From Octopus sinensis (lineage: Eukaryota), in contig NC_043014.1 in NCBI RefSeq assembly GCF_006345805.1, forward strand, positions 43,710,001-43,774,000: a stretch of 64,000 nt of DNA, read 5' to 3'. Below are positions 8,169 through 60,594 of the stretch, in pieces. The position numbers were made by a program, and so were the translations under genes. The notes below the pieces were generated by a model. It was not told where the DNA came from. It worked only from the letters and a program-made list of their open reading frames with translations, and made no database searches. Each line of letters opens with the position of its first letter. Position 1 is the stretch's first letter.

Positions 8169-9144
8169 GTCATTTATTTAGTATTTATTAATTAATCCTC
8201 GTAAACTATATCTGCTGTTATCACATTGAACTCTCTCCTACAATCATCCTGTTTCGGAAATATATCTAATGTAGGCACAAGCATGGCTGTGCGGTAAAAA
8301 GTTGGCTTCCCAACCACATGGTTCCAGGTTCAAATCCCACTGTGTGGCACCTTCAGGGCAAGTGTCTTCTATTACAGCCTTGGGCTGACCGAAGCATTGT
8401 GAGTAGATCTGGTGGACAGAAATTGACAGGAAGGCAGTGAGTTGGCAGAAACGTTAGCACACTGGGCGAAATGCTTAGCAGTATTTTATCTGCCGTTACA
8501 TTCTGAGTTTCTAATTCCGCCGAAGTCGACTTTGCCTTTCATCTATTCAGGGTCAATAAATTAAGTACCAGTTATGCACTGGGGTCGATGTAATCAACAT
8601 ATCGTCATCATATAAGAGAGAGATTTTGGCTGATTTTTCTAGCATGTTGAAATGATCGCATAGGGGATCCCTCATAAGCTGAGTGTGTTGTTTGTAATGT
8701 CTGTTGTGAATAAGTTTTGTTTGTTGCATTTTATTTTTTTCATGTTAGCCTGTATTGGAAGGGACCATAATTGGGAGACCATTTCCCTCATCAACCCTAC
8801 ACCTTTCTACCAAATAGCTGTTTATTCAACTGGTCTTCAAAAGCTCTGTATGGTCTGTTGTAACATCAGCAAGAAATATAAGCATCATATCACCATTTCA
8901 GTTAGACAAGAACAAGTGAAGCTGTGAAATGCCAATATTTGTGAACACACACACACATGCATTGCATATGCATATGTGCATACACTTACACATGAATACA
9001 TGTGCACTCACACATACACTAGGCTTCCATGCAGTGTCTGTTGACTGATTCCACTGCAAATAAATACTTTAAACAGCAACAAGAACAGCAATATATTGCA
9101 TTGGTCACATGTTACTAATTGTCTACAATATCTGACAAGGCGTG

Positions 9145-17272: not shown

Positions 17273-17505
17273 TTGTTTCTTTACTACCCACAAGGGTCTA
17301 AACATAAAAGGGACAAACAAGGACAGACAAATGGATTAAGATGCTTACATCAACCCCAGTGCGTAACTGGTACTTAATTTATCGACCCCGAAAGGATGAA
17401 AGGCAAAGTCGACTTCGGCGGAATTTGAACTCTGAATGTAGCGGCAGACGAAATACGGCTACGCATTTTGTCCGGCGTACTAACATTTCTGCCAGCTCGC
17501 CGTCC
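17273..17505 (-). mobile_element. S2 tRNA-derived SINE, monomer
   Basis: Reverse complement of GGCGAGCTGGCAGAAA..GAGTTCAAATTCCGCCGAAGTCGACTTTGCCTTTCATCCTTTCGGGGTCGATAAATTAAGTACC..TAAAGAAA. The central motif resembles the Nin/Deu-type conserved SINE domain (from recall). Confidence 0.85.
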
Positions 17506-18361
17506 ATATGAGGATGTTGCCTCTATAGTATTAACCTACGCTATTGGGCATGCCCCATATCAGTTTTATCGTCTATATTCTTCTATGTTGGCTTGTTGAA
17601 AGAGGGCATTAATTTTGGAGTTTTCCTTCACTTAAATTGATTGCTTTCACCACAGCTAAGGAACTCAATCTGTCCTTACAAAAATCTATACCATCTATTG
17701 CGGGGACCTTGGCAGATACAACTGTTCCGGTTCAGAACAGACCTGAGGGTAATGAGAATTAAAGGGTGACCTTATACCCCCTGCAAATCCAGAACTCTGA
17801 AACTGGACCCTTACTACCAGATGCAGTTAGTTAAATGGTGTACATAGAACTAATCAACTATAATTTATTATTCAAGCCCTCTCCACTCCAAATAATAAAT
17901 TGTAGTTTCTGTAACAATGTTCAAAAATCAGTTTTTAATCCTTAAAGTTCTGTACAGGATATCCACAGTGGTTGCCTATTCTTCAACTGCATGAAATCAC
18001 AGTTCAAATAATGTTGTTGGTGGTGGTGGTGTTGTTGTTTGGAGGTCAGAACCTGATGCTAAGAACTCTTCCATACTAGAAACAAAGTTTAGTCTTTTTT
18101 TAGACAGAACTTCTTATCAAAAGACTTCTTGTTCACCCCATATTTTTTTGTAATCGGTTTCAGCTCAAAGCTGTGGCCATGCTGGGGCACCATCGTTATA
18201 TGTTTATTTTTTGCATTTTATCAAGTACGTACTCTGATTTTTCTTGTTTTTTTAAAAATTTAATTATCAAGCTCAATAGTAGTAAATGTCTCAAGTGGTA
18301 AGTTAAAAATTGGGTGATTTTGCATATTAATCATTTATTTATTTATCTTTTTCGCTTTTGG

Positions 18362-19290
18362 ATTTGGTTTGCAAGATTCTTTATATGAGTTTGTGTGTTG
18401 AAGCAATTTTGTTGTGTCTGGGGAGAGTCATTTTCTTTTTGTGCCTTATAATTTAATACACTCACCGGTGAAATTTCCATTTATTTCTTATTTATATTTT
18501 CCTAAAATTTTCGTTGCATCTTGCAACCTTTTCAATAGTCAAAACTATTGAAAAGATTGCAAGACACAATGAAAATTTTTGGAAATTAAAAATAAGAAAT
18601 AAGTGGAAATTTAACCGGTGAGTGTGTTAAATTATAAGGCACAAAAATAGTCAAGACTATTGAAAAGGGTTTCAAGATGCAACGAAAATTTTAGGAAAAT
18701 AAAAATAAGAAATAAGTGGAAATTTAACCGGTGAGTGTGTGTTAAATTATAAGGCACAAAAATAGTCAAGACTATTGAAAAGGGTTTCAAGATGCAACGA
18801 AAATTTTAGGAAAATAAAAATAAGAAATAAGTGGAATTTAACCGGTGAGTGTGTTAAATTATAAGGCACAAAAATAGTCAAGACTGTTGAAAAGGGTTTC
18901 AAGATGCAACGAAAATTTTAGGAAAATAAAAATAAGAACTAAGTGGAAATTTAACCGGTGAGGGTGAGTGTGTTAAATTATAGGCACAAAAATAGTCAAA
19001 ACTATTGAAAAGGGTTTCAAGATGCAACGAAAATTTTAGGAAAATAAAAATAAGAAATAAGTGGAAATTTAACCGGTGAGTGTGTTAAATTATAAGGCAC
19101 AAAAATAGTCAAGACTATTGAAAAGGGTTTCAAGATGCAACGAAAATTTTAGGAAAATAAAAATAAGAAATAAGTGGAAATTTAACCGGTGAGTGTGTTA
19201 AATTATAAGGCACAAAAATAGTCAAGACTATTGAAAAGGGTTTCAAGATGCAACGAAAATTTTAGGAAAATAAAAATAAGAAATAAGTGT
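18362..19290. mobile_element. Fold-back hammerhead-bearing element (probable Penelope-like pLTR) with a tandem array of ~113-bp monomers
   Basis: One minus-strand copy (18362-18540) is joined head-to-head through the hairpin AATAGTC-AA-(G/A)ACTATT to ~6.6 plus-strand monomers starting near 18543, 18655, 18770, 18882, 19000, 19113 and 19226. Confidence 0.85.
18502..18538 (-). ncRNA. Minimal type-I hammerhead ribozyme, U3-A8 core variant (family A, best-paired copy)
   Basis: Minus strand reads CTA-TTGAAAA-G-GTTGC-AAGAT-GCAAC-GAA-AATT-T-TAG. This parses as stem I CTA/TAG, core N3UGANN8A with U3-A8, one extra G, a 5-bp stem II, GAA, palindromic stem III AATT and U17. Folded by hand. Confidence 0.65.
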
Positions 19291-19605: not shown

Positions 19606-19773
19606 TGTCGAGTGGCTGTGTGGTAAGTAGCTTGCTAACCAACCACATGGTTCCGGGTTCAGTCCCACTGCGTGGCATCTTGGGCAAGTGTCTTCTGCTA
19701 TAGCCCCGGGCCGACCAATGCCTTGTGAGTGAATTTGGTAGACGGAAACTGAAAGAAGCCTGTCGTATATATG

Positions 19774-19804
<31 letters not shown>

Positions 19805-20000
19805 CTGTGTTTGTCCCCCTAGCATTGCTTGACAACCGATGCTGGTGTGTTTATGTCCCCGTTACTTAGCGGTTCGGCAAAAGAGACCAATAGAATAAGT
19901 ACTGGGCTTACAAAGAATAAGTCCCGGGGTCGAGTTGCTCGATTAAAGGCGGTGCTCCAGCATGGCCACAGTCAAATGACTGAAACAAGTAAGAGATTAA
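19606..20000 (+). mobile_element. S1 SINE
   Basis: Near full length. Confidence 0.9.
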
Positions 20001-20092
20001 AAAAAGAGAGTACAATAAAGTGCTAGCCAATCACTGAGATCAATATTATTGACAGACCCCACCATTCTCCAAATTTCAGACCTTGTGCCTAT

Positions 20093-20460
20093 ATATTTCT
20101 TTATTGCCCACAAGGGGCTAAACACAGAGGGGACAAACAAGGACAGACAAAGGAAACAAGTCGATTACATCGACTCCAGTGCGTAACTGGTACTTTATTT
20201 AATCGACCCCGAAAGGATGAAAGGCAAAGCCGACCTCGGCGGAATTTGAACTCAGAACGTAATGGCAGATGAAATACCTATTTCTTTACTACCCACAAGG
20301 GGCTAAAAAACACAGAGGGGACAAACAAGGACAGACAAATGGATTAAGCCGATTATATCGACCCCAGTGTGTAACTGGTATTTATTTAATCGACCTCCAA
20401 AAGGATGAAAGGCAAAGTCGACCTCGGCAGAATTTGAACTCAGTACGTAATGACAGACGA
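20093..20460 (-). mobile_element. S2 SINE dimer
   Basis: Two units joined at AAAGAAATAG|GTATTTC on the minus strand. Confidence 0.88.
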
Positions 20461-20584
20461 GAAACGATTATATCATACAAGAAAATTTCAGCCAAATTCA
20501 TGCAACATGCAGTTATGCTATTATGGTAGTTACTCTTCACTAACAGCATTTCAAGATTTCTAGTTTCTTACTTGGAGAGGTTTA

Positions 20585-21003
20585 TGTCCTTGTTTGTCCT
20601 CTCTGTGTTTGGCCCCTTGTGGGCAGTAAAGAAATAGGTATTTCGTCTGCCCCTACATTCTGAGTTCAAATTCCACCGAGGTCAACTTTGCTTTCATCCT
20701 TTCAGAGGTTGATTAAATAAGTACCAGTTACTCACTGGGGTCGATATTATCGACTTAATCCGTTTGTCTGTCCTTGTTTGTCCCCTCTATGTGTAGCCCC
20801 TTGTGGGTACTAAAGAAATAGGTATTTCGTATGCCTCTATGTTCTGAGTTCTAAGTCCACCAAGGTCAACTTTGCTTTCATCCTTTCGGAGGTCAATTAA
20901 ATAAGTACCAGTTACGCACTGGGGTCGATATAATCGACATAATCTGTTTGTCTGTCCTTGTTTGTCCCCTCTATGTGTTGCCCCTTGTGGGCAGTAAAAG
21001 AAT
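20585..21003 (+). mobile_element. S2 SINE multimer (partial + 2 units)
   Basis: Junction AAAGAAATAG|GTATTTCG near 20637 and 20821. Confidence 0.88.
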
Positions 21004-21952
21004 TAAAAAATATCAAAATTTCGTACATATACTCTACTATCTATTTAACAAAAAAAAAAAAGGGAAGGCATTTGGTAAATTAGCCTTAGTGACTGGAATG
21101 TCTTTGATTGTAGGTCTTTTAGATCAAGCTGGGTAGATCAAGAGAGTGGGGAGATGTTTGTCCAAACGTCATCAGCACAAGCCTGACATTTGTGATGTGG
21201 ATTAGCTGATATAAGTTGGATGCTATACGGTGGAACAATTGAAGTTTGCTATACAAGAATTTACTTTTAGTTGAATAATAATTTTCAGGCCTATAATGGC
21301 ATTTTACTAATTCTATTACTTGTGTTCTAACCATAAATTACATGAAATGCCATATAGCACAAGAGCAATGTAGCTGAATGTAAAAGCGTATTTATATGTT
21401 TAAAACATATCTGCAGTCTTTCTCATGCCCATTCTCACAATTTGAATTGGTTATTATTTAAATTTTTATTATTTCTGTGCTGGCAAACCATGTTATAATC
21501 TGCCATTAAGTGTTCTATGTTATATCCAATAAGCTGGTATAGACTACATTCCGACCTGATGAGAAACTAACAAATATCAAAACCAAACACCTGACTGCCA
21601 ACCATATGATTCAATCTCCAGGTGTGGCTGTGTAGTTAAGAAGTTTGCTTCTCAACAGCATGATTTCAGGTTCAGTCCTGCTGTCTGGCACCATAGGCAT
21701 GTCTTCTACTATAGCCTTCGATTCAAAGACTTGTGAGTGAATTTGGTAGATGGAAACTGAAAGAGGCCTGTGGCGAAGCCTGTTGTGTTGAGTGTGTCTT
21801 TGTGTCTGTATCTTCCTATTTGATCTTGTCAATGATGGACACTTGACCGCTAGAAGCAGTAGCGTTTCATCTCCCCACCAGGGATATATAGATTGACAGT
21901 TGCCAGAACAGGCGCTAGTGTCACGATTAGCCAGTTAGCTTGTTGCATATAT

Positions 21953-22190: not shown

Positions 22191-23151
22191 TATATATATA
22201 TATATTTATTTATTAGTGACAAAGTTAGTATTAATATCAAGAGGTAATATTTATTCCCACTTAAATGTAGATGTTCTGTTAGTGTTGTGGGGAGAAATTT
22301 GGGCTGGTCCACTACCAATAGTGTTCTGACACAGTCAGTATTGTCAGTTAGCGAGCTATGCTGTTGAGCCAGTCCTGCCAAGACGAAATACATCGTCATA
22401 ATGCAGGACATAACCGTTAGAACAAATTTTTCTGATAAAGTTACCATGAAAGAAAGTCATATTGGCTTTTTGGTATAAAATGCACTCTTTCTTTCTTTCT
22501 CTCTCTCTCTCTCTCTCTTTTCTCTTTCTCTCCTTTTCTGTCTATCACTTTCTCCCCCCCTCTCTCTCTCTCTGCTTGATTGATTGAACACAAGTTCCCT
22601 TCTACTTTGCAGTCATATGGTCTGAAGTAAGTCTATAAAAACCCTAGTTTGTTCTTGTTCCCATTCCTTCTTCTCAAAAAGCAAAGAAATTTTTTTAAAA
22701 ATACCATCTTGTTAATGGATGGCAAAACAAACATAAGTTGGGGACATGAGAAATTTGAAATAAAAATACCCGTTTTAACCATTTTTTAAGCCGTATTTTT
22801 GTTGTAAGACACTGCTTTCATTAAAAATAATGAAGAATTTATCAGTTCAGCAAAATCAACCTTGGCAGAATTTGAACTCAGAATGTAGTGGCAGATGAAA
22901 TACTGCTAAGCATTTCGCCCGGTGTGCTAACATTTCTGCCAGCTTGCTGCCTTTGACTTTGGTTTCTGACACCTCAGTGTGGCACAGTGGGCAAGTGGTT
23001 AAATTTATTGTTCTCAGACTGACCAAAATGTAATGAAATTTGCTAAACAATAACAGTATAGGAGAGACCAGACCATTTTGGGCTTTTTTTTTTTTTGTTA
23101 TTTGACAAACTTAATCTTTTGCCTGCTTCAACTTCAGCACCTGGCTTTTAA

Positions 23152-25350: not shown

Positions 25351-26070
25351 GCTTCAGCGATTTCTTTGATTATATGATACCAATGTTACTTCCGTTCCTC
25401 TGCTTTTTTTTTTTTTTCCTTCTTTCTTTATTATTTAAAGCCTATCAAACAATGCACTGGTTTTGTATTGTATAAAATAATCGGTTTGGGTTACCTTATA
25501 ATCTCTTTAGAATTTATTCCTAAGTGTGTAAAGAAATCCGGCAGAATCATGCAAACTGACTTATAAGAAAAAAAAACTTCTGGAAATTCTAGGGTTGGTC
25601 GTGGTGGTGAGGTGTTGGCTTGTTTTTGTTTGCCTTTGAAAACAAGTATTTCTACGATTTGGTTCTGCAATATACAATGTTCATTCGCCGTGTGTTTATA
25701 TTTTTATATTTCACTAGCTTTGAATTACAGCTAATTTGTGTTGTCTACACCGTATATATGAGGCAGAAGCCGATTAGCAGAATTATTTGAGCGTTGGACA
25801 GAGGATGCCTTATGGCAATTGTTCAGGCTTTTGATTATTTAAAAAAATTTTTTTTTTCCTTCCCATTTTTGTTTTTGTTTTTCTCATTCTTATTTAAAAT
25901 CCTGCTGAAGTCAGCTTGGCCTTTATATTCATTTAGGGTTAATAATATAACATACTAGTCTTGACCGATGGACCGGCAAAATTGTTAGAGTATCAGAAAA
26001 GATGCTTTCTGGTATTTCATTCTGGGATTTAGCATTCTACATTCAATTCCTGCAGAAGTCAACTCAGCCT

Positions 26071-26392
26071 TTCATCCTCCAAGATGTTGGTAAAGTACCA
26101 GTCAAGTACTGGGGTCGATTGCCCCCTCTCCCCTTTTGTCTTGTTCTCTTTCACTTGGCTGTACAGCAACACTATGAAAGGGTTACTGTGTGGGTTGCTG
26201 ACAGTATCACTACCATTCCCAGAATGGAGAATTCATCCTCCAAGATGTTGGTAAAATACCAGTCAAGTACTGGGGTCGATTGCTCCCTCTCCCCTTTTGT
26301 TTCATTCTCTTTCACTTGGCTATACAGCAACACTATGAAAGGGTTATGGTGTGAGCTGCTCACAGTATCACTACCATTCCCAGAATGGAGGA
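26071..26392. repeat. 161-bp direct tandem duplication
   Basis: TTCATCCTCCAAGATGTTGG at 26071 and 26232; the unit is the 3' part of an S2 relic plus flank. Confidence 0.88.
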
Positions 26393-27610: not shown

Positions 27611-28400
27611 GTGGGTGTGTCTTTGTGTCCGTCTCAGTCCTCCACCACTGCTTGAAAACTAGTTTTGGTGTTTTCATGTCTCTGTAACTTAGCATTTTGG
27701 CAAAAGAGACTGATAAAATAAGTATCAGGATTTAAAAAACAGAAACAAATAAAAAAAAAAATACAGGGTTAAATTTGTTCAACTAAAAGTCTTCAATGTG
27801 GTGCCCCAGCATGGCCACACTCTAATGACTGAAACATGTAAAAAAAATAGAACAGTGGCACAAGGCCAGAGATATAAGGAAATTTGGGTAGGGTTTAGGC
27901 CAATGAGATCAACCCCCTACTTGACTGGTATTTTATCACAATGACACCCACTCCCGCCTAAAAAGAGAAGTTGACCAGAATAGGATTTGAATTTGACGAT
28001 ATAAAGTGTCATAAGCATTTGCTGATATTTTATTGGACATTATTGTGTAAATAAGAATGTATGAAAAAGAACTTTCATTCACTCTAGATCCTAGTATTTC
28101 TGCAGTTTGGTTAGTATCATAATGTCTGTATGTAGACTTGTTCAATTCAGACATGTGTTGGTGTGGGTGGTGAGGAAAGAGTACAAAAGAAATTAAAACA
28201 GCTTCCACCACTTCACTTTTATTATTATTATTATTACTTACGCTCTTGAAAAACACGTGGCTCTCACTACTTCCTATTTCATTTTCTTTAAAAAGAGAAA
28301 TCTCGAGTTTTGCTGATATGTAAGTAATCTTTTATTGAAACCCAAACAGATTTTAAAAGAAAAAAAATATCCCCACATGAAATATCATGATGTCTCTTAA

Positions 28401-29124
28401 CCCTTTTGTTACCATATTTATTTTGAGATGCTCTGTGTTTCTTTGAATTACTTTCAATATAACAAAGAATTTAATAAAATAACGTAGTTATCACTCAGCT
28501 AGTGTTAGGAACATAGATTGTGACTAAGGTTTGGTGGAAGATTTTAATTCAAAACTTATGAAAAAAAGACATTTGTACTACAGAGCCAGAAGTGGTTTCA
28601 GCCGGGTTGGTAACGAAAGGGTTAAGAATTATTTCTCTATTATATATTTTAACCGTTTCATTACTGTAATTATTTTGAGATGCTCTGTGTTTCTTTGAAT
28701 TACTTTCAATATAACAAAGAATTTAATAAAATAACGTAGTTATCACTCAGCTAGTGTTAGGAACATAGATTGTGACTAAGGTTTGGTGGAAGATTTTAAT
28801 TCAAAACTTATGAAAAAAAGACATTTGTACTACAGAGCCAGAAGTGGTTTCAGCCGGGTTGGTAACGAAAGGGTTAAGAATTATTTCTCTATTATATATT
28901 TTAACCGTTTCATTACTGTAATTATTTTGAGATGCTCTGTGTTTCTTTCAATTACTTTAAATATAACAAAGAATTTAGTAAAATAACTTAGTTATCATGA
29001 AGCTAGTGTTAGGAACATAAATTGTGACTAAGATTTGGTGGAAGATATTAATTCAAAACTTACAAAAACAAGACATTTGTACTCAGAGCCAGAGGTGGTT
29101 TCAGCTGGGTTGGTAACGAAAGGG
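28401..29124. mobile_element. Three tandem piggyBac MITE A copies (28401-28621, 28653-28873, 28905-29124)
   Basis: Each copy is TTAA-flanked with CC..GGG termini; 252-bp period with an identical spacer. Confidence 0.88.
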
Positions 29125-29915
29125 TTAAGGTTTTAAAGGTAGATAGATGTCTTTTAGAAGCATATTGTTGCAAAATAATTTCTCTCTGGTCTTCCTTCTT
29201 TCTTGTCTGTCCCTCTTTCTTTCCCCCTTCCTCATCTTCTCCTTCCTTGACTCCCACTTTCTAATGTGGAGTTCTGCTTGAAATGTTGACTTTTCCTTTC
29301 CTCTCAGCAAATAATTTACCATTCCATTTTGCGGACTTCTTGCACATCACTGTTTTTTTATTTCTTTATTTCCCACAAGGGGCTAAACACAGAGGGGACA
29401 AACAGGGACAGACATTCTCTCCTTATACGAAGTTCATTTCTGAAATAGTCATAGTACCAATTTTCTGCCAAGTTCCTTGGTTTTAGCTCAAACCTACTAT
29501 CGCTAATTGGAACCAACGAAACGTCCTACGTTCCATTGCCAACCATCAAATATAGTTGTAGCCCTTATTTTAATTATATTAGACCAATCTCTCCCTATAC
29601 GTATCCCTCTTACTTTCCTTTCCATCATGTGATTCGAGTGTTTTATCTATTATATTTATCTGAACAGTTGTAATTTAGTTTACACTTATTTTGTCCACCT
29701 CCAGGGGTCATTAATCTTGTTAATGGGCCCGTGTCACTTGACCTATTTTTCCTCGATACACCATTTCAAATTTGAGTTAATTAATCAATAATTTTCTGTT
29801 TGTACTGCTCCTACCAGTTAATATTTCTGATATATGATATACGTGTCTAATTACTTTGCAATGTAAGAATATTTTTCTGTCCCTATTCCCTTCTTTCTTT
29901 CCATATCTTTCCTTT

Positions 29916-30132
29916 CCTTTCCTTTACTTGTGTCAGTCATTTGACTGCGGCCATGCTGGAGCACCGCCTTTAGTCAAGCAACTCGACCCCGGGACTTATT
30001 CTTTTGTAAGCCCAGTACTTATTCTATCGGTCTCTTTTTGCCGAACCGCTAAGTAACGGGGACATAAACGCACCAGCATCGGTTGTCAAGCAATGCTAGG
30101 GGGACAAACACAGACACACAAACACACACACG

Positions 30133-30175
<43 letters not shown>

Positions 30176-30320
30176 GAGCAAATCGACCCCGGGACTTATT
30201 CTTTGTAAGCCTAGTACTTATTCTATTGGTCCCTTTTTGCCGAACTGCTAAGTGACAGGGACGTAAACACACCAGCATCAGTTGTCAAGCAATGCTAGGG
30301 GGACAAACACAGACACACAA

Positions 30321-30351
<31 letters not shown>

Positions 30352-30523
30352 AATACATATATACGACGGGCTTCTTTCAGTTTGCGTCTACCAAATCCAC
30401 TCACAAGGCTTTGGTAGGCCCGAGGCTATAGCAGAAGACACTTGCCCAAGGTGCCACGTAGTGGGACTAAACCCGGAACCATGTGGCTGGCAAGGAAGCT
30501 ACTTACCACACAGCCACTCCTGC
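29916..30523 (-). mobile_element. S1 SINE with tandemly duplicated 3' half
   Basis: Tail to (TA)n at 29916-30172, then a second partial tail, microsatellite and head at 30173-30523. Confidence 0.88.
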
Positions 30524-37720: not shown

Positions 37721-38426
37721 ATGTTATCTTTGATCCCTTGGTGTGGCATTTTTTTTTAATCATAATATTTTCACTTACAGTGGAAACATGATTTTAAAGC
37801 TATATGCAGTCTAGCAAGTACTGTATGTTTAAAATACCTTATAGTTTGGTTTTTCTTGCTGTTGCATGTGTGTATGCACACATGCATGCACATGTGTACA
37901 TGTACATGCACATCCTATGTTATTGATGCTATAGAATAGAATATCTTGCAAAATAATTAAGGTAGCCATCTATGTATCATACTTAAACGTATACACAGGG
38001 TTGATGGGCCACTTACTGCTGTATTTGTTCTGATATAACATCCCTTATGGATATGCTGAGTTAAAAACAATAATGTCAGAGGAAATAAAAGTTCATCACA
38101 GCAGCATCCTGCAAGAATAGCAGATGCATTGTGGCCATTTAGAAATGACATGAACTCACAGCCAGCCTCATACTCAGATGAAAATCCACTGTGTCTAATA
38201 TAAGAAAATGTGAATATAACATTCACTGATGCTGCAAAGAGCTTCCTGGCTGAAAAAAAATCTGGTGTATGCAACTGAGGTAGCATTTCATTAAGTACTA
38301 AGATATTTTTGTACGAAGTTATGGGTGTCACAAGGTAGAAATATCGACACCATCTTACCATCCACCTGTTCTTTCTCTTTTTCTCTCCTCTCTCATACAC
38401 ATTTTTAATTTACTGGTTTCACTTAT

Positions 38427-39386
38427 TCAGAATCGTTAGCACGCCGGGCGAAATGCTTTGCAGTATTTCATCTGCCACTACGTTCTGAGTTCAAATTCCG
38501 CCGAGGTCAACTTTGCCTTTCATCCTTTTGGGGTCGATTAAATAAGTACCAGTTACGCACTGGGGTCGATATAATCGACTTAATCCGTTTGTCTGTCCTT
38601 ATTTGTCCTCTCTGTGTTTAGCCCCTTGTGGGTAGTAAAGAAATAGGTATTTCGTCTGCCACTACATTCTGAGTTCAAATTCTGCCGGGGTCAATTTTGC
38701 CTTTCATCCTTTCGGGGTCGATTAAATAAGTACCAGTTACGCACTGGGGTCGATATAATCGACTTAATCCATTTGTCTGTCCTTGTTTGTCCTCTCTGTG
38801 TTTAGCTCCTTGTGGGTAGTAAAAAAATAGGTATTTCGTCTGCCGCTACGTTCTGAGTTCAAATTCCGCCGAGGTCAACTTTGCCTTTCATCCTTTCAGG
38901 GTCGATTAAATAAGTACCAGTTACACACTGGGGTCGATGTAATCGACTTAATCCGTTTGTCTATCCTTGTTTGTCCTCTCTGTGTTTAGCCCCTTGTGGC
39001 TAGTAAAGAAATAGGTATTTTGTCTGCCGCTACGTTCTGAGTTCAAATTCCCCCCGAGGTCGACTTTTCCTTTAAATCTTTTGTGGTCAATTAAATAAGT
39101 ACCAGTTATGCACTGGGGTAGATATAATCGACTTAATCCATTTGTCTGTCCTTGTTTGTCCTCTCTGTGTTTAGCCCCTTGTGGGTAGTAAAGAAATAGG
39201 TATTTCGTCTGCCGCTACGTTCTGAGTTCAAATTGCGCCGAGGTCGACTTTGCCTTTCATCCTTTCGGGGTCGATTAAATAAGTACCAGTTACGCACTGG
39301 AGTCAATATAATCAACTTAATCCGTTTGTCTGTCCTTGTTTGTCCTTTCTGTGTTTAGCCCCTTGTGGGTAGTAAAGAAATAGGTA
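38427..39386 (+). mobile_element. S2 SINE pentamer, 184-bp period
   Basis: GTATTT unit starts at 38463, 38647, 38831, 39015 and 39200. Confidence 0.92.
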
Positions 39387-40304
39387 AAAAGGTTTGATCT
39401 GGATGTGACTGGTTTAGATAGACACTAACGAATTAAGTAACTCTTCTAGTTTGAAACGAGAGGAGATGGGAAGCAAAGGTATCTCTGATATTTCTTTCAC
39501 CTTGGTCACCATTTGGCTATTGTAAAAGATGCTCACTCAAAGCACTGCATCGTGGGATTGCTGCCATGTGCTTGCAAAATAAACTGCTTAACTATCCAGT
39601 TATGTTATAGCTGTATTTAAATTCACTAGTTTTCCATTACCAAAGTAATGCACTATGTAATGGGATAGTACAGAATATTATTAATAATATTATTACGGTG
39701 TTGTTGTTGTTGTTGTTGTTGCTGCTGTTGTTATTGTTATTAGGTAATGTTGACTACTTTTCCATTAACTAAGTAATGGGAAAAATAGCCACCTTAAACA
39801 ACAGTCGTCGTACTAAATATTTACTTTACTCAACTTACTGATTACTCTCTTACTTGGCCGTACCGCTACGCTACTTGTTAAGTTCTGCAGACACACACAT
39901 GGATGTGCACACGAATATATAAGCACATCTACGCATGCATAAAGACGTGTACCCACACACACACGTGTGTGTATGTCTGTGCAGAGAGTGGAGATCTCAT
40001 TCACTGTTTCATTGGGTGGATATAATGTCAGAAGAAAATGAATGAACTTAATATAAAAGCTGTTTTAGTGGTAGGTATAAATAACGGTCGGTTTTATATA
40101 CGTCACAAAAACCGAAAGCATATTAAAAACCTTTCTCTCATTAATAACAAATCACAGACTTGTCAGCCTGGGAACAAAGCTCCAATGAGCAATGTTATAA
40201 CATAAAAATTTTTCTAAAAGTTATCAAACCTCATGATTTTTAATTGTTACATGGTACATAACGAGTTACAACACATTGTTCTGCAGGCCAGCTAAACATA
40301 GACA

Positions 40305-42749: not shown

Positions 42750-43140
42750 TAGGCTGTGTGGTAAGTAGCTTGCTTATGAACTACATGGTTCTGGGTTCAG
42801 TCCCACTGCATGGCACCTTGGGCAAGTGTCTTCTGCTATAGCCTCGGGCTGACCAAAGCCTTGTGAGTGGATTTGGTAGACGGAAACTGAAAGAAGCCCG
42901 TCGTATATATGTATATATATATGTGTGTGTGTGTCTGTGTTTGTCCCCCTAACATCGCTTGACAACTGATGCTGGTGTGTTTATGTCCCCCGTAACTTAG
43001 CGGTTCGGCAAAAGAGACCGATAGAATAAGTACTAGGCTTATAAAGAATAAATCCTGGGGTCGATTTGCTCGACTAAAGGCGGTACTCCAGCATGGCCAC
43101 AGTCAAATGACTGAAACAAGTAAAAGAGTAAAAGAGAGTA
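42750..43140 (+). mobile_element. S1 SINE
   Basis: Near full length. Confidence 0.9.
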
Positions 43141-50612: not shown

Positions 50613-51006
50613 GGGCGCAGGAGTGGCTGTGTGGTAGGTAGCTTGTTTACCAACCACATGCTTCCGGGTTCAGTCCCACTGTGTGGCACCTTGGGCAAGT
50701 GTCTTCTACTATAGCCTCGGGCCGACCAAAGCCTTGTGAGTGGATTTGGTAGACGGAAACTCAAAGAAGCCTGTCATATATATGTATATATATATATGTG
50801 TGTGTGTGTTTGTCCCCCTAGCATTGCTTGACAACCGATGCTGGTGTGTTTATGTCCCCGTTACTTAGCGGTTCAGCAAAAGAGACTGATAGAATAAGTA
50901 CTGGGCTCACAAAAGAATAAGTTCCGGGGTCGAGTTGCTTGATTAAAGGCGGTGCTCCAGCATGGCCGCAGTCAAATGACTGAAACAAGTAAAAGAGTAA
51001 AAGAGA
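50613..51006 (+). mobile_element. S1 SINE
   Basis: Full length. Confidence 0.9.
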
Positions 51007-51325: not shown

Positions 51326-51849
51326 AGGATCTTTACCTTTTGACCTACAATTTAAAAAATAATTTTTTGTAACTAAACACTTTCAAACTTCGGACACTGG
51401 TAGAATGTGTCATATAAAACATCTTTTACTCTTAGCATTTTTGAGAAAAACTTATAATTACGTAAATATTTCACCTTAAAGTTCTCGTATTTCGGTAATT
51501 TCAACCAATCAATGACGTGTATTCAGCTGAATAAAATTACTGCCGCTGTTTGTCAACAATAACTTCCGGCGGTAAATTTTTTTTGTCACTGTTATTTATG
51601 ACATCGTTCGTGCATTTGTACTGATTTTAGGGTTAGGGTGTTACGGTTGGGGTTTTAGGGTTAGGGTTATCATAAATAACAGTGATAAATGAAATATACA
51701 CTGCCAGAAGTTCTTGTTAACGAACAACAGCAGTAATTTTATTCAGCTGAATACACGTCATTGATTGGTTGAAATTACAGAAATACGAGAAATTTAAGGT
51801 GAAATATCTTTGTAAATATAAGTCTTTCTCAGAAACTGTAAAGAATCCC
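51326..51849. mobile_element. Fold-back element with TTAGGG-containing loop
   Basis: Inverted arms of ~135 bp (about 51465-51600 versus 51672-51810) around TTTTAGGGTTAGGG..TTTTAGGGTTAGGGTT. Ends GGATCTTTAC / GTAAAGAATCCC. Confidence 0.8.
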
Positions 51850-54469: not shown

Positions 54470-55430
54470 TCAAATATGTCCTTAATTTTTAAGACAGTAG
54501 GCTATGATTTTTAGAGAGATTTGGTTGTCATTTCTAGCAGGTTGAGTTGTCACATAAATCTCTCCTGTTGGCTCAAAACACATTTATCTTTCTCTGTAAC
54601 TTTCTAGAATAATAAAAGATCTAGGCCTACGTTATCCAATATGCTCTTTATTTTTTAAGACAGTAGGCTATGATTTTTAGAGAGATTTGTTGTCATTTCT
54701 AGCAGTTGAGTTGTCACATAATCTCTCCTGTTGGCTCAAAAACATTTATCTTTCTCTGTAACTTCTAGAATAATAAAAGATCTAGGCCTACGTTATCCAA
54801 TATGCTCTTTATTTTTTAAGACAGTAGGCTATGATTTTTAGAGAGATTTGGTTGTCATTTCTAGCAGGTTGAGTTGTCACATAAATCTCTCCTGTTGGCT
54901 CAAAACACATTTATCTTTCTCTGTAACTTTCTAGAATAATAAAAGATCTAGGCCTACGTTATCCAATATGCTCTTTATTTTTTAAGACAGTAGGCTATGA
55001 TTTTTAGAGAGATTTGGTTGTTATTTCTAGCAGGTTGAATAGTCACATAAATCTCCGTTGTTGGCTCAAAACACACATTTATTTTTCTCCGTAACTTTCT
55101 GGAAAAATAAAAGATCTAGGGTTATATGATCCAATGTGTTCTTTATTTTTTAAGACAGTAGGGTATGATTTTCTTTTTTTTTAGAGAGATTTGGTTGCTA
55201 TTTCTAGCAGGTTGAGTAAACACATAAATCTCCGTTGTTGGCTCAAAACACACATTTATTTTTCTCCGTAACTTTCTGGAAAAATAAAAGATCTAGGCCT
55301 ACATTTTCCAATATGTTCTTTATTTTTTTAAGACAGTAGGGTATGATTTTCTGTTTTTTTAGAGAGATTTGGTTGCTATTTCTAGCAGGTTGCATAATCT
55401 CGTAAATTTCCGGTGTTGGCTTGAAGCGCA
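54470..55430. repeat. Tandem array of a ~166-bp unit, ~5.7 copies
   Basis: AAGACAGTAG at 54491, 54657, 54818, 54984, 55152 and 55330. Confidence 0.92.
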
Positions 55431-55740: not shown

Positions 55741-57276
55741 GCAATGTCTGTCGTGTATAAACTTCACTTTGGTGACAGATTAATGCTGAAAGATATTTAA
55801 TTTGTACTTTAGGACTTCTGTAAACTTACCAACAGGCCATGAATGTGACATGGTCAGTCGTGTCTTTCTGTTGTTCTATGTAAAATGAGATAGCAGAAAA
55901 CACTATCTACCATTTTGGGATCTTTTCGGTTTGAACGAACAGCAGTTTTTTCTAGCGGTGTCATATGAAATTGTCACCCATAATTATGACCCTAGTATCG
56001 ATCTATTGCATTTCAATCTGTTTTAGGTTTAGGGTTAGGGGTGGGGGGAAGGGTATCTTTTTTTCTTCACAAATGTAAATAAACCCAATCTTTTTCTTAG
56101 ACGAGGGGCATATTCATATGGCACTGGATGTTTTTTTTTACCTCAATGGACGTCATTGATTGGTTGAAATTGCAGAAATTGAAGAAAAAAAGCAACAAAT
56201 ATCTCACATGGCAATGTCTGTCGTGTATAAACTTCACTTTGGTGACAGATTAATGCTGAAAGATATTTAATTTGTACTTTAGGACTTCTGTAAACTTACC
56301 AACAGGCCATGAATGTGACATGGTCAGTCGTGCCTTTCTGTTGTTCTATGTAAAGTGAGATAGCAGAAAACTTTATCTACCATTTTTGGATCTTTTCGGT
56401 TTGAACGGCAGTTTTTTCTAGCGGTGTCATATGAAATTGTCACCCATAATTATGATCCTAGTATCGCTCTATTGCATTTCAATCTGTTTTATGGTTAGGG
56501 TTAGGGTTAGGGTGGGGGAAGGGTATCTTTTTTTCTTCACAAATGTAAATAAACCCAATCTGTTTCTTAAACGAGGGACATTCATACGGCACATAATGTT
56601 TTTTTTTACCTCAATGGACGTCATTGATTGGTTGAAATTGCAGAAATTGAAGAAAAAAGCAACAAATATCTTACATGGTGATGTCTGTCATGTATAACCT
56701 TCACTTTGGTGACAGATTAATGCTGAAAGATATTCGGTTTGTACTTTAGGACTTCAAGTAAACTGACCAACAGGACATGAATGTGACATGGTCACTCGTG
56801 TCTTTCTGTTGTTCTATGTAAAATGAGATAGCAGAAAACACTATCTACCATTTTGGGATCTTTTCGGTTTGAACGAACAGCAGTTTTTTCTAGCGGTGTC
56901 ATATGAAATTGTCACCCATAATTATGACCCTAGTATCGATCTATTGCATTTCAATCTGTTTTAGGTTTAGGGTTAGGGGTGGGGGGAAGGGTATCTTTTT
57001 TTCTTCACAAATGTAAATAAACCCAATCTGTTTCTTAAACGAGGGACATATTCATACGGCACAGAATGTTTTTTACCTCAATGGACGTCATTGATTGGTT
57101 GAAATTGCAGAAATTGAAGAAAAAAACAACAAATATCTTACAAACTATAGAATTTTCTCAATAAAGCCAAGAGAAAAAGATGTTTTATAAACACATTCTA
57201 CCAGTATATGATGTTTAAAATTTTTTAGTTACCTAGAAATTATGTTAAAATCTGCCGTTCAAACCAAAAAGATCCC
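55741..57276. repeat. Triplicated ~470-bp unit (host flank + 5' part of a TTAGGG-bearing TIR element) ending in the complete element 56855-57276
   Basis: Units start at 55741, 56211 and 56678. TIR GGGATCTTTTCGGTTTGAAC / GTTCAAACCAAAAAGATCCC, with CATTTT on both sides. Confidence 0.9.
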
Positions 57277-58009
57277 CATTTTGTTCTGCCAAAACATTTA
57301 GTTTTTATAAATTTTTGTGTGTGTGTGTGTTTTTTTTTTCTTATTATTATTGTTTTACTTTTGTTTTCTGATCCAAACATGATAGCTTGGCCATAAGTTA
57401 ATGCAGTGCTTTCCAATATTTTGAGGCTGCCAAAACACTTGAATCTTGCTAAAAAATAAGGCAATACACCTAAAATATGCTAAATATGGTTGTTAATAAT
57501 TTAAATACCTGTTCAGGTAAACAGTCAGGTTATCAGAATAAACATGGTGTGGCTGTATGGGTAAGAAACTTGGTTTGCAATCACGTGGTTTTGAGTTCAG
57601 TCCCACTGTGCACCACCTTAGGCAAGTGTTTTCTACTATAACTCCGAGCCAATTAATGCCTTGCAAGTAAATTTGGTAGATGGAAACTGTATGGGAGCCT
57701 TTCATGCATGTGTGTGTGTGTTTTCGTTTTGAAACCCCCACCACCAAGCCACATGCTGGACAACTGGTTTGCTTACACCTCCGTAAATTAGCATTTTGGC
57801 AAAAGAGACTGATAGAATAAGTACCAGATTTAAAGAGAAGGGGACATGAAGGGGTGCTGTAAAGTTCCTGGCTTTAAGATTATCGCGAAAAGGCCTGGTT
57901 GGAAGTCCAACCTTCCAAGTTCTTTTACTGGGCTTGGAAAAACTGAAGGGCTCCTGCAATAAGTGTGTGAATATTCTTCTATAATTCCCTAAGTCCTTTG
58001 ATTTGGCCA

Positions 58010-58330
58010 TTGACTTTGCCTTTCAACCTTTCGGGGTCGCTAAATTAAATACCAGTTACGCACGGGGGTCGATCTAATCGACTTAATCCATTTGTCTGTC
58101 CTTGTTTGTCCCCTCTGTGTTTAGCCCCTTGTGGGTAGTAAAGAAATAGGCATTTCATCTGCCGTTACATTCTGAGTTCAAATTCTGCCGAGGTCGACTT
58201 TGCCTTTCATCCTTTCGGGGTCGCTAAATTAAGTACCAGTTACGCACTGGGGTTGATGTAATCAAGTTAATCCCTTTGTCTGTCCTTGTTTGTCCCCTCT
58301 ATGTTTAGCCCCTTGTGGGCAATAAAGAAA
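58010..58330 (+). mobile_element. S2 SINE dimer, part of a local duplicate of 59.6-60.1 kb
   Basis: Same junction, followed by the same unique flank as at 59992. Confidence 0.85.
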
Positions 58331-58847
58331 CATATTCCTCTATAATTCCTTAAGTCCTTTGATTTGGCCGTCCCGTTCCCTAAGGGCAACCACTGGGCCA
58401 TTTATCTCTTATCACTTTTTAAAGATATGTATTAAGTTATAAGAAAGAGACAGTACATATGGTAATGAATAAAAACATAATTAACTGGATCTTCGATATT
58501 TTCTGTTACCTAAAAACCAGGAACTTTTCAGTATCCTCTTGTAAGTACTGGTGTTGACTTATTTGACTAAAACCCTTGAAGGTAGTACCGCAGGATGTCT
58601 GCTGTCCAATGACTGAATCAAGTGAAGGTTGTTTTTTTTTGTTTTAACTCTTAATTTTTTTTTTTGTCTTTTCTAATAATGGCATCTACTCCACTGGAGA
58701 TCTTGAATATTCAACAGGTTACATCAACTCCATGGTTTAATATTCATTAAATAGAACATATTAAGGGTTTTGGTGGGACACTAAACATGCACAGGTTAAA
58801 ACAGTAAGGAAAACATCATAGATAAAAAAAAGAAAGATTTCAACGTT

Positions 58848-59024
58848 AGACGCAGGAGTGGCTGTGTGGTAAGTAGCTTGCTAACCAACCACATGGTTCT
58901 GGGTTCAGTCCCACTGCATGGCATCTTGGGCAAGTGTCTTCTGCTATAGCCCCGGGCTGACCAATGCCTTGTGAGTGGATTTGGTAGACGGAAACTGAAA
59001 GAAGCCTGTCGTATATATGTATAT

Positions 59025-59070
<46 letters not shown>

Positions 59071-59303
59071 ATATATATATGTATGTGTTTGTGTGTCTGT
59101 GTTTGTCCCCCTAGCAATGCTTGACAACCGATGCTGGTGTGTTAACGTCCCCGTCACTTAGCGGTTCGGCAAAAGAGACCGATAGTATAAGTACTGGGCT
59201 TACAAAGAATAAGTCCCGGGGTCGATTTGCTCGACTAAAGGCGGTGCTCCAGCATGGCCGCAGTCAAATGACTGAAACAAGTAACAAGAGTAAAAGAGAG
59301 AGT
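58848..59303 (+). mobile_element. S1 SINE
   Basis: Full length. Confidence 0.9.
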
Positions 59304-59535
59304 AACCTGGAATAATTTTGCTGCCACCTGTGTAATCGTATGGTTGAGTAATTAATGTTAATTATTAATAGTTGCAATCTATTTCCTGCCGACCACTCAA
59401 CTGTGGATTCAAGATAAAACTGGTTTGTAAAGCCAAAGAAAATGAAACATTGGTCAAGGACAGCAAGCAGCTGTTGTGGGTAGGCTTGAAAAACTCAACA
59501 ACAACTGTTTTTGTGAATACTCCTCTATAATTCCT

Positions 59536-59991
59536 CAAGGCGGTGGTGAGCTGGCAGAAACGTTAGCACACCGGGTGAAGTGCTTAGCGGTATTTTGTCT
59601 GACGTTACATTCTGAGTTCAAATTCCGCCAAGGTCGACTTTGCCTTTCATCCTTTCGGGGTCGATAAATTAAGTACCAGTTACGCACTGGGGTCGATATA
59701 ATCAACTTAATACCTTTGTCTGTCCTTGTTTGTCCTCTTTGTGTTTAGCCCCTTGTGGGTAGTAAAGAAATAGGTATTTCGTCTGCCATTACATTCTGAG
59801 TTCAAATTCTGCCGAGGTCGACTTTGCCTTTCATCCTTTCTGGATCGATAAATTAAGTACCAGTTACACACTGGGGTCGATTAAATAAGTACCAGTTACG
59901 CACTGGGGTCGATGTAATCGACTTAATCCTTTTGTCTGTCCTTGTTTGTCCCCTCTATGTTTAGCCCCTTGTGGGCAATAAAGAAATAGTT
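59536..59991 (+). mobile_element. S2 SINE dimer with 15-bp TSD
   Basis: TCCTCTATAATTCCT at 59521-59535 and 59992-60006; units start at 59590 and 59774. Confidence 0.9.
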
Positions 59992-60594
59992 TCCTCTATA
60001 ATTCCTTAAGTCCTTTGATTTGGCTGTCCCATTCCCTAAGGGCAGCCACTGGGCCATTCATCTCTTATTGCTTTTTAAAGATATGTATTAAGTTATAAGA
60101 AAGAGACAGTACATATGGTAATGAAAATAAAATCCACCATAGACAAGTATTATATCTTCTGACCAAAATGCATTTAAATGTTGAAAAAACACAAAAAATG
60201 AAATTGTTCAGAGATTGTAAGTCAGTAGAATGTAATGCATCAAAGCTTTGAAACTTTGTGTTTTGATAGAGGTTTGTGAGTTCAATATTGATTCTCTCTC
60301 CTACCTCCCATATATATATGTGTATATTATGGAACATTGGATTTTCAAAATCTTTATATAAAGCTGTAAGTAAAAGCATGTAAAATATTGATTTGAAAAT
60401 TCATCTTTGAGATAGAAAAAGTCAGATTCCCATGGGCAGCATTGAACTTTTTCCATCTAAAAGGGTTTCTCATCCCAATATTTACATGCTGTTATTTATA
60501 GTTTTATGTGAAATCTTTCAAGATTCTATGTTCCAAAAATGAATCGTTTCACATTTCCCCAAAAGCTTAGAAGGTTGTTGTGATGTCAACAGCG

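What the first reader, a model, noticed from the sequence alone, without database searches (positions are those of the whole stretch)
38427..39386. S2 SINE multimers with one invariant junction at five loci, one enclosed by a single TSD
Seen: 184-bp units are always joined as AAAGAAATAG|GTATTTC (20.3, 20.6-20.8, 38.6-39.2, 58.1 and 59.8 kb). The A-box head is present only before the first unit. The dimer at 59536-59991 lies inside one 15-bp TSD, so it was inserted as a multimer. The unit starts with GT, ends with AG, keeps the B box, and its consensus has no T4 terminator. Inference: either a multimeric master copy, or rolling-circle/reiterative reverse transcription of a 184-nt circular RNA. 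Local unequal crossover would not be expected to reuse the same junction at each locus.
Basis: partly seen in the sequence, partly recalled or inferred. Interest (0 to 1): 0.72.

Follow-up and report, generated by a model that had tools for sequence, protein, structure and literature searches.

The report
SINE body repeated in tandem arrays
A short retroposon (a tRNA-like SINE) occurs here mostly as arrays in which its 184-bp body is repeated head-to-tail through one fixed joint; whole arrays were copied into new sites, which makes this an invertebrate case of the known SINE-to-tandem-repeat transition, with no evidence for a circular RNA.

Summary
Five arrays (20.1, 20.6, 38.4, 58.0, 59.5 kb) contain nine internal joints, all AAAGAAATAG|GTATTTC in the same register (0.01 expected by chance). 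The monomer is a ~50-nt box-A head plus the 184-nt unit. No internal unit has a head. All five arrays end at the SINE's native 3' end. Their 5' ends vary: full head, head position ~14, and unit positions ~1, 48 and 134. Two arrays sit inside flush target-site duplications: 15/15 bp around head+2 units, and 35/37 bp around 1.75 units. That is the polarity of LINE-mediated insertion with 5' truncation, so the arrays were inserted as multimers. In three dimers, unit 1 and unit 2 differ at the same sites, which argues for a multimeric source gene. In the pentamer and in 20.6 kb the units group by array, which fits local amplification. Nothing supports a 184-nt circle: no ribozyme, an unremarkable fold, heads on the two longest arrays, fixed 3' ends, and a GT/AG phase that is ambiguous by one base. 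The closest known cases are SINE-derived satellites of squamates and multimeric SINEs. I file it as a new member of a known kind. Recurrent template jumping by the reverse transcriptase remains a live rival. No DNA outside the window could be obtained.

The parts
38428..38462 (+). 5'-truncated head of the pentamer, starting at about head position 14; box A half missing
38463..39386 (+). Five 184/185-bp units (38463-38646, 38647-38830, 38831-39014, 39015-39199, 39200-39383) plus GTA, the first 3 nt of a sixth unit. No flush TSD.
59521..59535 (+). 5' copy of the 15-bp TSD (TCCTCTATAATTCCT)
59540..59589 (+). Complete tRNA-like head (box A region GAGCTGGCAGAAA) of the dimer
59590..59989 (+). Unit 1 (59590-59773) and unit 2 (59774-59989; 216 bp because of a 32-bp internal duplication at 59845-59913)
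59992..60006 (+). 3' copy of the 15-bp TSD
57972..58008 (+). 5' copy of a 37-bp TSD (35/37) in the paralogous host repeat
58013..58332 (+). 5'-truncated dimer: unit 1 from position 48 (58013-58149) and unit 2 (58150-58332); no head
58333..58369 (+). 3' copy of the 37-bp TSD
20094..20467 (-). Dimer without head: unit 1 at 20278-20465, unit 2 at 20094-20277. The 5' end lies at about the head/body boundary. No flush TSD.
20587..21005 (+). Older array: unit positions 134-184 (20587-20637) plus two units (20638-20821, 20822-21005). No head and no recognisable TSD.
17274..17505 (-). Reference monomer (head + one unit) inside a 27-bp TSD (24/27; 17506-17532 and 17247-17273)
8437..8601 (+). Monomer fragment: head plus unit positions 1-120
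22850..22944 (-). Monomer fragment: head plus unit positions 1-54
29359..29416 (-). Strongly 5'-truncated copy: the last ~58 nt of the unit, followed by an A-rich tail

Best explanation
S2 is a tRNA-like SINE of about 235 bp. It has a ~50-nt head with box A, followed by a 184-nt remainder that holds box B, a core shared with other SINE families in the window, and a 3' end ...GTAAAGAAATA(G).

A subfamily exists in which the 184-nt remainder is reiterated. The native 3' end of one unit is joined to SINE position ~50/54 (GTATTTC) of the next. I infer that this joint arose once and is identical by descent.

Source genes of the form head-(unit)n are transcribed by RNA polymerase III from the single head (box A plus the first box B). 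No unit carries a T4 terminator, so the polymerase reads through all units. This step is inferred.

The multimeric RNA is then inserted by a partner LINE through target-primed reverse transcription. The footprints of this step are shown: fixed 3' ends, variable 5' truncation, and TSDs of 15-37 bp around whole arrays.

Unit number then changes at the DNA level by unequal crossover or replication slippage, in source genes and after insertion. This step is inferred. It would give the pentamer at 38.4 kb and the 2.28-unit array at 20.6 kb.
For: Nine of nine internal joints are identical in register, at four or five loci.

A head is never internal.

Five of five arrays end within 3 nt of the monomer's 3' end. 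Random ends would give about (7/184)^5. The 5' ends are: full head, head ~14, and unit ~1, 48 and 134.

Flush TSDs enclose head+2 units (15/15) and 1.75 units (35/37). The monomer has 24/27.

The two arrays in the paralogous host repeat share the first-nick site but differ in TSD length and 5' end, as expected for two separate insertion events of the same dimer type.

In the dimers at 20.1, 58.0 and 59.5 kb, unit 1 has GGGTAGT and GAT(A/C)TAATC, and unit 2 has GGGCAAT and GATGTAATC. Same-position identity averages 92.2%, against 90.1% for different positions.

Units of 38.4 kb and 20.6 kb group by array. The pentamer's genealogy is star-like, and its only shared variants are at CpG sites.

The consensus has no T4.

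Other repeats in the same 64 kb also form tandem arrays of 113-470 bp. These include a related SINE with one head and a 161-bp body x2 joined at a different position, and a 205-bp complete SINE x5. DNA-level amplification is therefore common here.

Precedent: SINE-derived satellites with a longer terminal unit that reaches the SINE terminus, and SINE multimers of up to eight units (PMC10702118; PMC8466645).
Against: Only one 64-kb window was available, and no external locus with a multimer could be fetched.

Position-specific support rests on 2 linked sites plus 1-2 partial ones. No formal test is possible with three dimers.

The same joint occurs in two subfamilies (GATTAAAT and GATAAATT). 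A single origin then needs later homogenisation or recombination.

Both units at 58.0 kb share a private change (GTCGCT), which points to concerted change or to copying of one template.

Three of five arrays have no flush TSD.

The pentamer ends with an internal-type unit plus GTA rather than the terminal-type unit, so its 3' end needs a secondary deletion or internal priming.

No transcript data. The partner LINE was not identified.
Confidence: 0.55

Rival explanations
1. Concatemers are made anew at each insertion. The LINE reverse transcriptase copies an S2 RNA up to position ~50/54. That point is either the 5' end of a processed, head-less RNA or the far end of a helix formed with the docked 3' tail of a second S2 RNA. 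The enzyme then jumps to the 3' end of that second RNA. It repeats this n times and sometimes finishes on a full-length RNA that still has its head.
For: The joint runs exactly from RNA 3' end to a fixed internal point in all nine cases.

GAAATA-GG-TATTTC is an inverted repeat, so the tail can pair with the unit start. Flush arms of >=6 bp occur at 1.3% of random window positions. The terminal helix appears in the fold of the unit.

In the monomer fold, the unit starts 1 nt after the apical loop of a 12-bp head hairpin.

One array (20.1 kb) starts at about the boundary.

Units within an array share subfamily markers and private changes.

The pentamer is star-like.

Unit 2 at 59.8 kb is a chimera of two subfamilies at an internal direct repeat.

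End-to-end template jumping by non-LTR reverse transcriptases (R2) is established biochemistry (my own knowledge, not checked here).
Against: The shared unit-1/unit-2 differences across three dimers are not predicted.

Template jumps often add untemplated bases, and none is seen.

The related SINE at 25975-26390 has the homologous head and GGTATTTC motif, but its duplication joint lies ~57 nt further 3'. There is therefore no common processing site.

No head-less monomer starting at unit position 1 is present in the window.
Confidence: 0.22
2. A 184-nt circular RNA is copied by rolling-circle reverse transcription, giving arrays of identical units. The circle would come from splicing at GT...AG, from tRNA-type processing, or from a ribozyme.
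For: The unit has no T4. It begins GT and ends AG in one phasing. The pentamer's units are equidistant. Animal retrozymes show that small circular RNAs can underlie dispersed tandem repeats of 150-450 bp (PMC7229834).
Against: No Rfam family matches the array on either strand up to E=10, and that library includes the hammerhead, twister, HDV-like, pistol and hatchet ribozymes.

The unit fold has z -0.10, so it is not highly self-paired.

Heads sit at the 5' end of the two longest-reaching arrays.

All five 3' ends are the linear SINE's 3' end.

Units 1 and 2 of the dimers already differed at insertion.

The sequence before AG is purine-rich.

The GT/AG phase is ambiguous by one G.
Confidence: 0.04
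3. Arrays are dispersed as DNA, for example by extrachromosomal circles from an array that reintegrate, or by segmental duplication. They are not dispersed through RNA.
For: Three arrays lack flush TSDs. The window is full of tandem arrays of unrelated repeats.
Against: DNA reintegration predicts random phase at both ends. Instead all 3' ends are native and only the 5' ends vary. Two arrays have flush TSDs that start at the head or at a truncation point. Array flanks are unrelated except for the host repeat at 58.0/59.5 kb.
Confidence: 0.05
4. Each array formed locally and independently. Either a 5'-truncated S2 copy inserted into the tail of a resident copy, or unequal crossover occurred between neighbouring monomers.
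For: [quoted passage not shown]
Against: It predicts variable joints, internal heads and internal TSDs. Nine of nine joints are identical, none has a head, and the TSDs lie outside the whole array.
Confidence: 0.03

Closest known systems
SINE-derived satellites (sSat) of squamate reptiles (Vassetzky et al. 2023, PMC10702118)
   Same: Tandem repeats of a part of a tRNA-related SINE, with a longer terminal unit that continues to the SINE terminus. Many dispersed short loci of a few units. The unit is of nucleosome size. The authors describe a continuum running from SINEs with long internal duplications to satellite-like arrays.
   Different: The host here appears to be a mollusc (cephalopod-like; inferred, not tested). 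Arrays are short (2-5 units) and show footprints of retrotransposition as arrays (TSDs, 5' truncation), which that paper does not claim. Chromosomal position and long arrays could not be examined.
Dimeric and multimeric SINEs (Alu; tandems of B2, Dip and Ves SINEs, PMC8466645)
   Same: Head-to-tail SINE units. At least some are retrotransposed from a multimeric template, with one TSD around the whole.
   Different: In those families each unit is a complete SINE or a complete monomer with its own promoter region. Here the internal units lack the 50-nt head, and the joint is one fixed internal breakpoint.
Non-LTR retrozymes of animals (PMC7229834; bioRxiv 10.64898/2026.07.22.740005)
   Same: Dispersed tandem repeats of 150-450 bp, ranging from dimers to large multimers. 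They are also found in molluscs and are proposed to move through RNA.
   Different: Retrozymes are defined by a hammerhead ribozyme in every unit and by highly self-paired circular RNAs. S2 units have no ribozyme match and an ordinary fold, and their arrays start with a Pol III head.
Retroposons with a variable-number internal repeat (SVA VNTR; Bov-A2 made of two Bov-A units). From my own knowledge, not checked here.
   Same: A repeated internal module whose copy number varies between copies of one mobile family.
   Different: Different origin, promoter and unit size. No sequence relation.

Membership tests
tRNA-derived SINE | Internal Pol III promoter: box A and box B in a 5' tRNA-related region | tested here: inconclusive
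   Box-A-like GAGCTGGCAGAAA in the head and box-B-like GAGTTCAAATTCC at unit positions 24-36. However, ARAGORN and the Rfam tRNA model find nothing, and the alignment fold gives only a 4-bp consensus stem.
tRNA-derived SINE | Dispersed copies flanked by target-site duplications, with 5' truncation and a constant 3' end | tested here: met
   TSDs of 27 bp (monomer), 15-19 bp and 37 bp. 5'-truncated copies at 29359, 58013 and 20587. 3' ends are constant.
tRNA-derived SINE | 3' region shared with a partner LINE | not testable with these tools
   No LINE with this 3' end is in the window, and no ORF of >=130 aa looks like a coding gene, let alone a reverse transcriptase (by eye, not scanned against profile libraries).
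SINE-derived satellite (sSat) | Tandem units equal to a portion of a SINE, with a longer terminal unit that reaches the SINE terminus | tested here: met
   The 184-bp unit is the SINE minus its head. The head occurs only on the first unit (59.5 kb complete, 38.4 kb partial)..
SINE-derived satellite (sSat) | Satellite-like behaviour: long homogenised arrays and a subtelomeric preference | not testable with these tools
   Only a 64-kb window was available. The longest array has 5 units.
Dimeric/multimeric SINE retrotransposed as one element | One TSD encloses the whole multimer, and one promoter sits at the 5' end | tested here: met
   59521-60006 (15/15) and 57972-58369 (35/37)..
Dimeric/multimeric SINE retrotransposed as one element | Position-specific diagnostic differences shared by independent copies (a source gene with diverged units) | tested here: inconclusive
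   GGGTAGT/GGGCAAT and GATA/GATG separate unit 1 from unit 2 in three dimers. These are only 2 linked plus 1-2 partial sites.
Non-LTR retrozyme | A self-cleaving hammerhead (or other small ribozyme) in each unit | tested here: not met
   cmscan of 38300-39500 on both strands at E<=10 gave 0 matches. The whole window at gathering threshold gave 0.
Non-LTR retrozyme | The unit RNA is highly self-paired | tested here: not met
   MFE -40.1 kcal/mol against a shuffle mean of -39.7; z -0.10.
Spliceosomal-intron-like unit | GT...AG with a pyrimidine tract before AG | tested here: not met
   GT/AG appears only in one of two equally valid phasings. The 17 nt before AG are GGGTAGTAAAGAAATAG, which is purine-rich.

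The most novel reading that the evidence does not exclude
The fixed joint is not inherited but is remade at every insertion. The 3' tail of a second S2 RNA (GAAAUA) docks on the complementary UAUUUC, which lies just 3' of the apical loop of the head hairpin. When the LINE reverse transcriptase reaches that point it is handed the docked 3' end and starts a new unit. SINE concatemers, and from them satellite seeds, would then be produced during reverse transcription itself, without any circle and without DNA recombination.
Probability: 0.2. Interest if true: 0.65.

Novelty: new member of a known kind. Interest (0 to 1): 0.33.

Why it matters
It gives a clean small-scale example, apparently in a cephalopod-type genome, of how a SINE turns into a dispersed tandem repeat. 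TSDs and 5' truncation show that the arrays themselves are mobile.

That matters in three ways.

- Repeat annotation: SINE copy numbers and 'tandem repeat' classes overlap, and in this window more S2 loci are multimers (5) than monomers or fragments (4).
- Models of satellite birth.
- Interpretation of arrays of box-B (TFIIIC-type) sites as possible chromatin elements. This last point is speculation from general knowledge.

It does not open a new class of element. I found no description of such arrays in the octopus repeat papers I searched, but those searches cover only the held open-access library.

Tried and rejected
**Ribozyme or retrozyme reading.** Rfam at E<=10 on the array and at gathering threshold on the whole window gave nothing. 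ARAGORN gave nothing.

**Viroid-like fold.** The unit's z-score is -0.10.

**More loci from outside the window.**
- The joint pattern and a conserved body pattern in JGI metagenomes gave 0 and 0.
- GTDB genomes gave 0.
- IMG/VR gave 0.
- A protein search with the 73-aa open frame that crosses the joint gave one hit. Its 543-bp contig is an ordinary monomer of a related SINE.

**Conserved head structure across 13 related SINE heads.** Only a 4-bp stem came out, too weak to place the breakpoint in a tRNA cloverleaf.

**TSDs for 20.1, 20.6 and 38.4 kb.** Only offset 8-9-mers were found, compatible with chance. Their flanks are unique in the window.

**Inverted duplication or twin priming for the two facing arrays at 20 kb.** Rejected. 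Both carry outward 3' ends, a 121-bp unique spacer separates them, and their units are only 80-85% alike.

**Larger segmental duplication covering 58.0 and 59.5 kb.** Homology stops about 60 bp upstream and 145 bp downstream. A simple DNA duplication cannot produce the perfect 37-bp TSD around the truncated copy.

**Dimeric higher-order periodicity in the pentamer.** One alternating site only, and it is a CpG.

**Direct microhomology at the joint.** Only 1 nt is shared.

**Coding potential.** ORFs of >=130 aa are all low-complexity.

Full report
**What is there.** The window is AT-rich (64% A+T), full of microsatellites and short interspersed repeats, and has no convincing gene. It looks like an intergenic or intronic stretch of an animal genome. 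From memory the SINE resembles those of octopus. I could not test that, and nothing below depends on it.

TRF reports a 184-bp period x 5.0 at 38463-39386, with 91% matches. The five units sit at 38463, 38647, 38831, 39015 and 39200. A BLAST of one unit against the window finds four more multimers:
- 20094-20465 on the minus strand (2 units);
- 20587-21005 (51 nt + 2 units);
- 58013-58332 (137 nt + 1 unit);
- 59590-59989 (2 units).

It also finds one full monomer (17274-17505, minus strand) and three fragments (8437-8601, 22850-22944, 29359-29416).

**The monomer defines the element.** It is a ~50-nt head (consensus GGCGGCGAGCTGGCAGAAACGTTAGCACGCCGGGCGAAATGCTTAGCG, holding the box-A-like motif) followed by the 184-nt unit. 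The unit carries the box-B-like GAGTTCAAATTCC at positions 24-36. It also carries a core shared at 65-75% identity with at least nine other SINE copies in the window, and it ends ...GGG(T/C)A(G/A)TAAAGAAA(T/C)A. A related monomer turned up on a 543-bp metagenome contig.

**The joint.** AAAGAAATAGGTATTTC with up to two mismatches occurs nine times. These are exactly the nine internal joints, against 0.01 expected. No internal unit carries a head. The head-to-body boundary ...GCTTAGC(G/A)GTATTTC is found only in monomers and in front of the first unit at 38.4 and 59.5 kb.

The head at 59540-59589 is complete. The one at 38428-38462 starts at about head position 14. The other three arrays have none. 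Their first units start at about unit position 1 (20.1 kb), 48 (58.0 kb) and 134 (20.6 kb).

The G at the joint can belong to either side, because native 3' ends read ...GAAACA...GAAATA or ...GAAATAG. So 'GT...AG' is one of two phasings. The stretch before AG is purine-rich and is not acceptor-like.

**Polarity and TSDs.** All five arrays end within 3 nt of the monomer's 3' end, while their 5' ends are scattered. This is the signature of target-primed reverse transcription with 5' truncation. It is not expected for reintegrated DNA or for priming at random on a circle.

Flush TSDs were found:
- 15/15 (18/19 if extended) around head+2 units at 59.5 kb;
- 35/37 around the 1.75-unit copy at 58.0 kb;
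- 24/27 around the monomer.

The arrays at 20.1, 20.6 and 38.4 kb have no flush TSD. The 20.6 kb array is old: its units are 78-88% identical to units of other arrays and 88.6% to each other. The 38.4 kb array ends in an internal-type unit plus GTA, the first three bases of a further unit, so its 3' edge is probably secondary.

**The 58.0 and 59.5 kb loci.** Their flanks are homologous: about 94% over 142 bp downstream, and about 60 bp upstream at lower identity. Both arrays therefore sit in two copies of one ~230-bp host repeat, with the SINE 3' end at the same host position (after GTGAATA).

They differ in TSD length (37 versus 15-19 bp) and in 5' end. In the 58.0 kb copy the extra 18 bp of host sequence is perfectly duplicated on both sides. 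A DNA duplication of one filled site does not produce that. Two insertion events at the same first-nick site do.

**Units by position or by array.** Results come from the alignment and identity matrix and from split counts.

In the three dimers (20.1, 58.0, 59.5 kb):
- unit 1 has GGGTAGT and GAT(A/C)TAATC;
- unit 2 has GGGCAAT and GATGTAATC;
- at 58.0 and 59.5 kb, unit 1 also has CTCTGTG and unit 2 has CTCTATG.

Unit 2 of 20.1 kb is closest to unit 2 of 59.5 kb (94.5%), and not to its own neighbour (89.1%). So the two units were already different in the template that was inserted. That fits a source gene with diverged units and contradicts copying round a single circle. The support is thin: two linked sites and one or two partial ones.

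In contrast, the five units at 38.4 kb and the two at 20.6 kb group by array. Within the pentamer, the only variants shared by subsets are four CpG sites, and private changes run from 2 to 11 per unit. That is a star-like burst. It is compatible with local amplification, with a homogenised source, or with reiteration during reverse transcription.

Two subfamily markers (GATTAAAT versus GATAAATT) both occur with the same joint. Both units at 58.0 kb also share a private change. Some concerted change or recombination must therefore be added to a single-origin model.

**Tests of the circle idea.**
- Rfam finds no family at E<=10 in the array on either strand, and none in the window at gathering score.
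- The unit folds at -40.1 kcal/mol against -39.7 for shuffles.
- A 184-nt circle has no head, yet the two arrays that reach furthest 5' have one.
- 3' ends are those of the linear element.

The consensus does lack T4. That is equally what a Pol III read-through multimer needs.

**Context.** Tandem arrays with periods of 113-470 bp are frequent in this window.

Two of them are SINE-based. At 25975-26390 a related SINE has one head and a 161-bp body twice, again with 3' end joined to an internal point, but about 57 nt further into the element than in S2. At 62941-64000 a different, complete 205-bp tRNA-like SINE is repeated more than five times with uniform joints.

So amplification of SINE-sized units is a general habit of this genome, and the breakpoint is family-specific rather than set by a common RNA-processing site.

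**An unexplained detail.** The S2 joint GAAATA-GG-TATTTC is an inverted repeat. Flush arms of six or more occur at 1.3% of random window positions. In the monomer fold, the same UAUUUCGUC pairs with the head in a 12-bp hairpin, and the unit begins one base after its loop. The joint of the related SINE at 26.2 kb is also partly palindromic (GGAGAA|TTCATCC). This keeps alive a model in which the tail of a second RNA docks there and the reverse transcriptase switches template.

**Comparison with the literature.** SINE-derived satellites of squamates are described as tandem repeats of a SINE portion with a longer terminal unit that reaches the SINE terminus. They form a continuum with SINEs that bear long internal duplications (PMC10702118). 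The same paper notes that proper SINEs form multimers of up to eight units. For mouse B2, 40% of copies are multimeric, and the origin of its tandem dimers (insertion into a tail, or retroposition of a dimeric template) is left open (PMC8466645). Animal retrozymes are tandem 150-450-bp repeats defined by a hammerhead in each unit and by circular RNAs (PMC7229834). S2 fails both tests. The octopus repeat papers I could search do not mention SINE multimers.

**Verdict.** The inference 'inserted as a multimer' is sound and is strengthened by a second TSD-bounded, 5'-truncated array.

The most likely account is a multimeric SINE subfamily whose joint is inherited. It moves by ordinary LINE-mediated retroposition, and its copy number changes by unequal crossover. 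I put this at about 0.55. Recurrent template jumping is the main rival (about 0.2). The circular-RNA idea is unlikely (about 0.04).

This is a new member of a known kind, and of moderate to low interest.

Noticed in passing
window 38640-38653 and the eight other joints: The invariant joint GAAATA-GG-TATTTC is an inverted repeat, so the SINE tail is complementary to the first bases of the unit. Flush arms of >=6 bp occur at 1.3% of random positions in this window. In the monomer the same bases pair with the head in a 12-bp hairpin whose loop lies just before the unit start.
   Followed up: partly
window 57910-58008 + 58333-58475 and 59480-59539 + 59990-60132: Two copies of a ~230-bp host repeat, 1.6 kb apart, each carry an S2 dimer at the same first-nick position (after GTGAATA). 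TSD lengths differ (37 versus 15-19 bp). This suggests a preferred target, possibly through pairing of GAATA with the SINE tail.
   Followed up: partly
window 59845-59913: The 32-bp internal duplication in unit 2 has two copies that carry the two different subfamily markers (GATAAATT, then GATTAAAT). It looks like recombination or a template switch between subfamilies at the GGGGTCGAT direct repeat, not simple slippage.
   Followed up: partly
window 25975-26390: A related SINE family with the same architecture: one head, then a 161-bp body twice. The joint ...AATGGAGAA|TTCATCCTCC lies at a different position of the element than in S2.
   Followed up: partly
window 62941-64000 (runs off the end): An unrelated, complete 205-bp tRNA-like SINE is repeated more than 5 times with uniform joints. 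Each unit has its own TGGCCCAGTGGTTAG and GGTTTCGATTCCC boxes. The TRF consensus unit also has no T4 run, although a few individual copies show one (GCATTTTCG, GGTTTTG, ACTTTTAGG).
   Followed up: no
window 18534-19289, 28397-29129, 54473-55350, 55741-57142: Further tandem arrays of 113, 252, 166 and 470 bp (3-6.6 copies, 91-95% matches). Their origin was not determined. Together with the SINE arrays, about a tenth of the window consists of arrays with medium-sized units.
   Followed up: no
window 17247-17273 / 17506-17532: The monomer's 27-bp TSD contains CCTCTATAG (read on the opposite strand), close to the CCTCTATAA of the host-repeat target. This may reflect a near-palindromic target preference, or chance.
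   Followed up: no
window 58847-59300 and more than 15 other places (e.g. 19610-20012, 42752-43138, 50616-51006): A different, very abundant ~450-bp interspersed repeat with an internal (TA)n. At 29977-30363 it forms a 199-bp x 1.9 tandem.
   Followed up: no
window 51625-51668: A short interstitial telomere-like repeat (TTTTAGGGTTAGGG x 3).
   Followed up: no
L001 (ENA metagenome contig, 543 bp): A related monomeric SINE on a contig from an environmental or host-associated metagenome, presumably host DNA carried into the sample.
   Followed up: no
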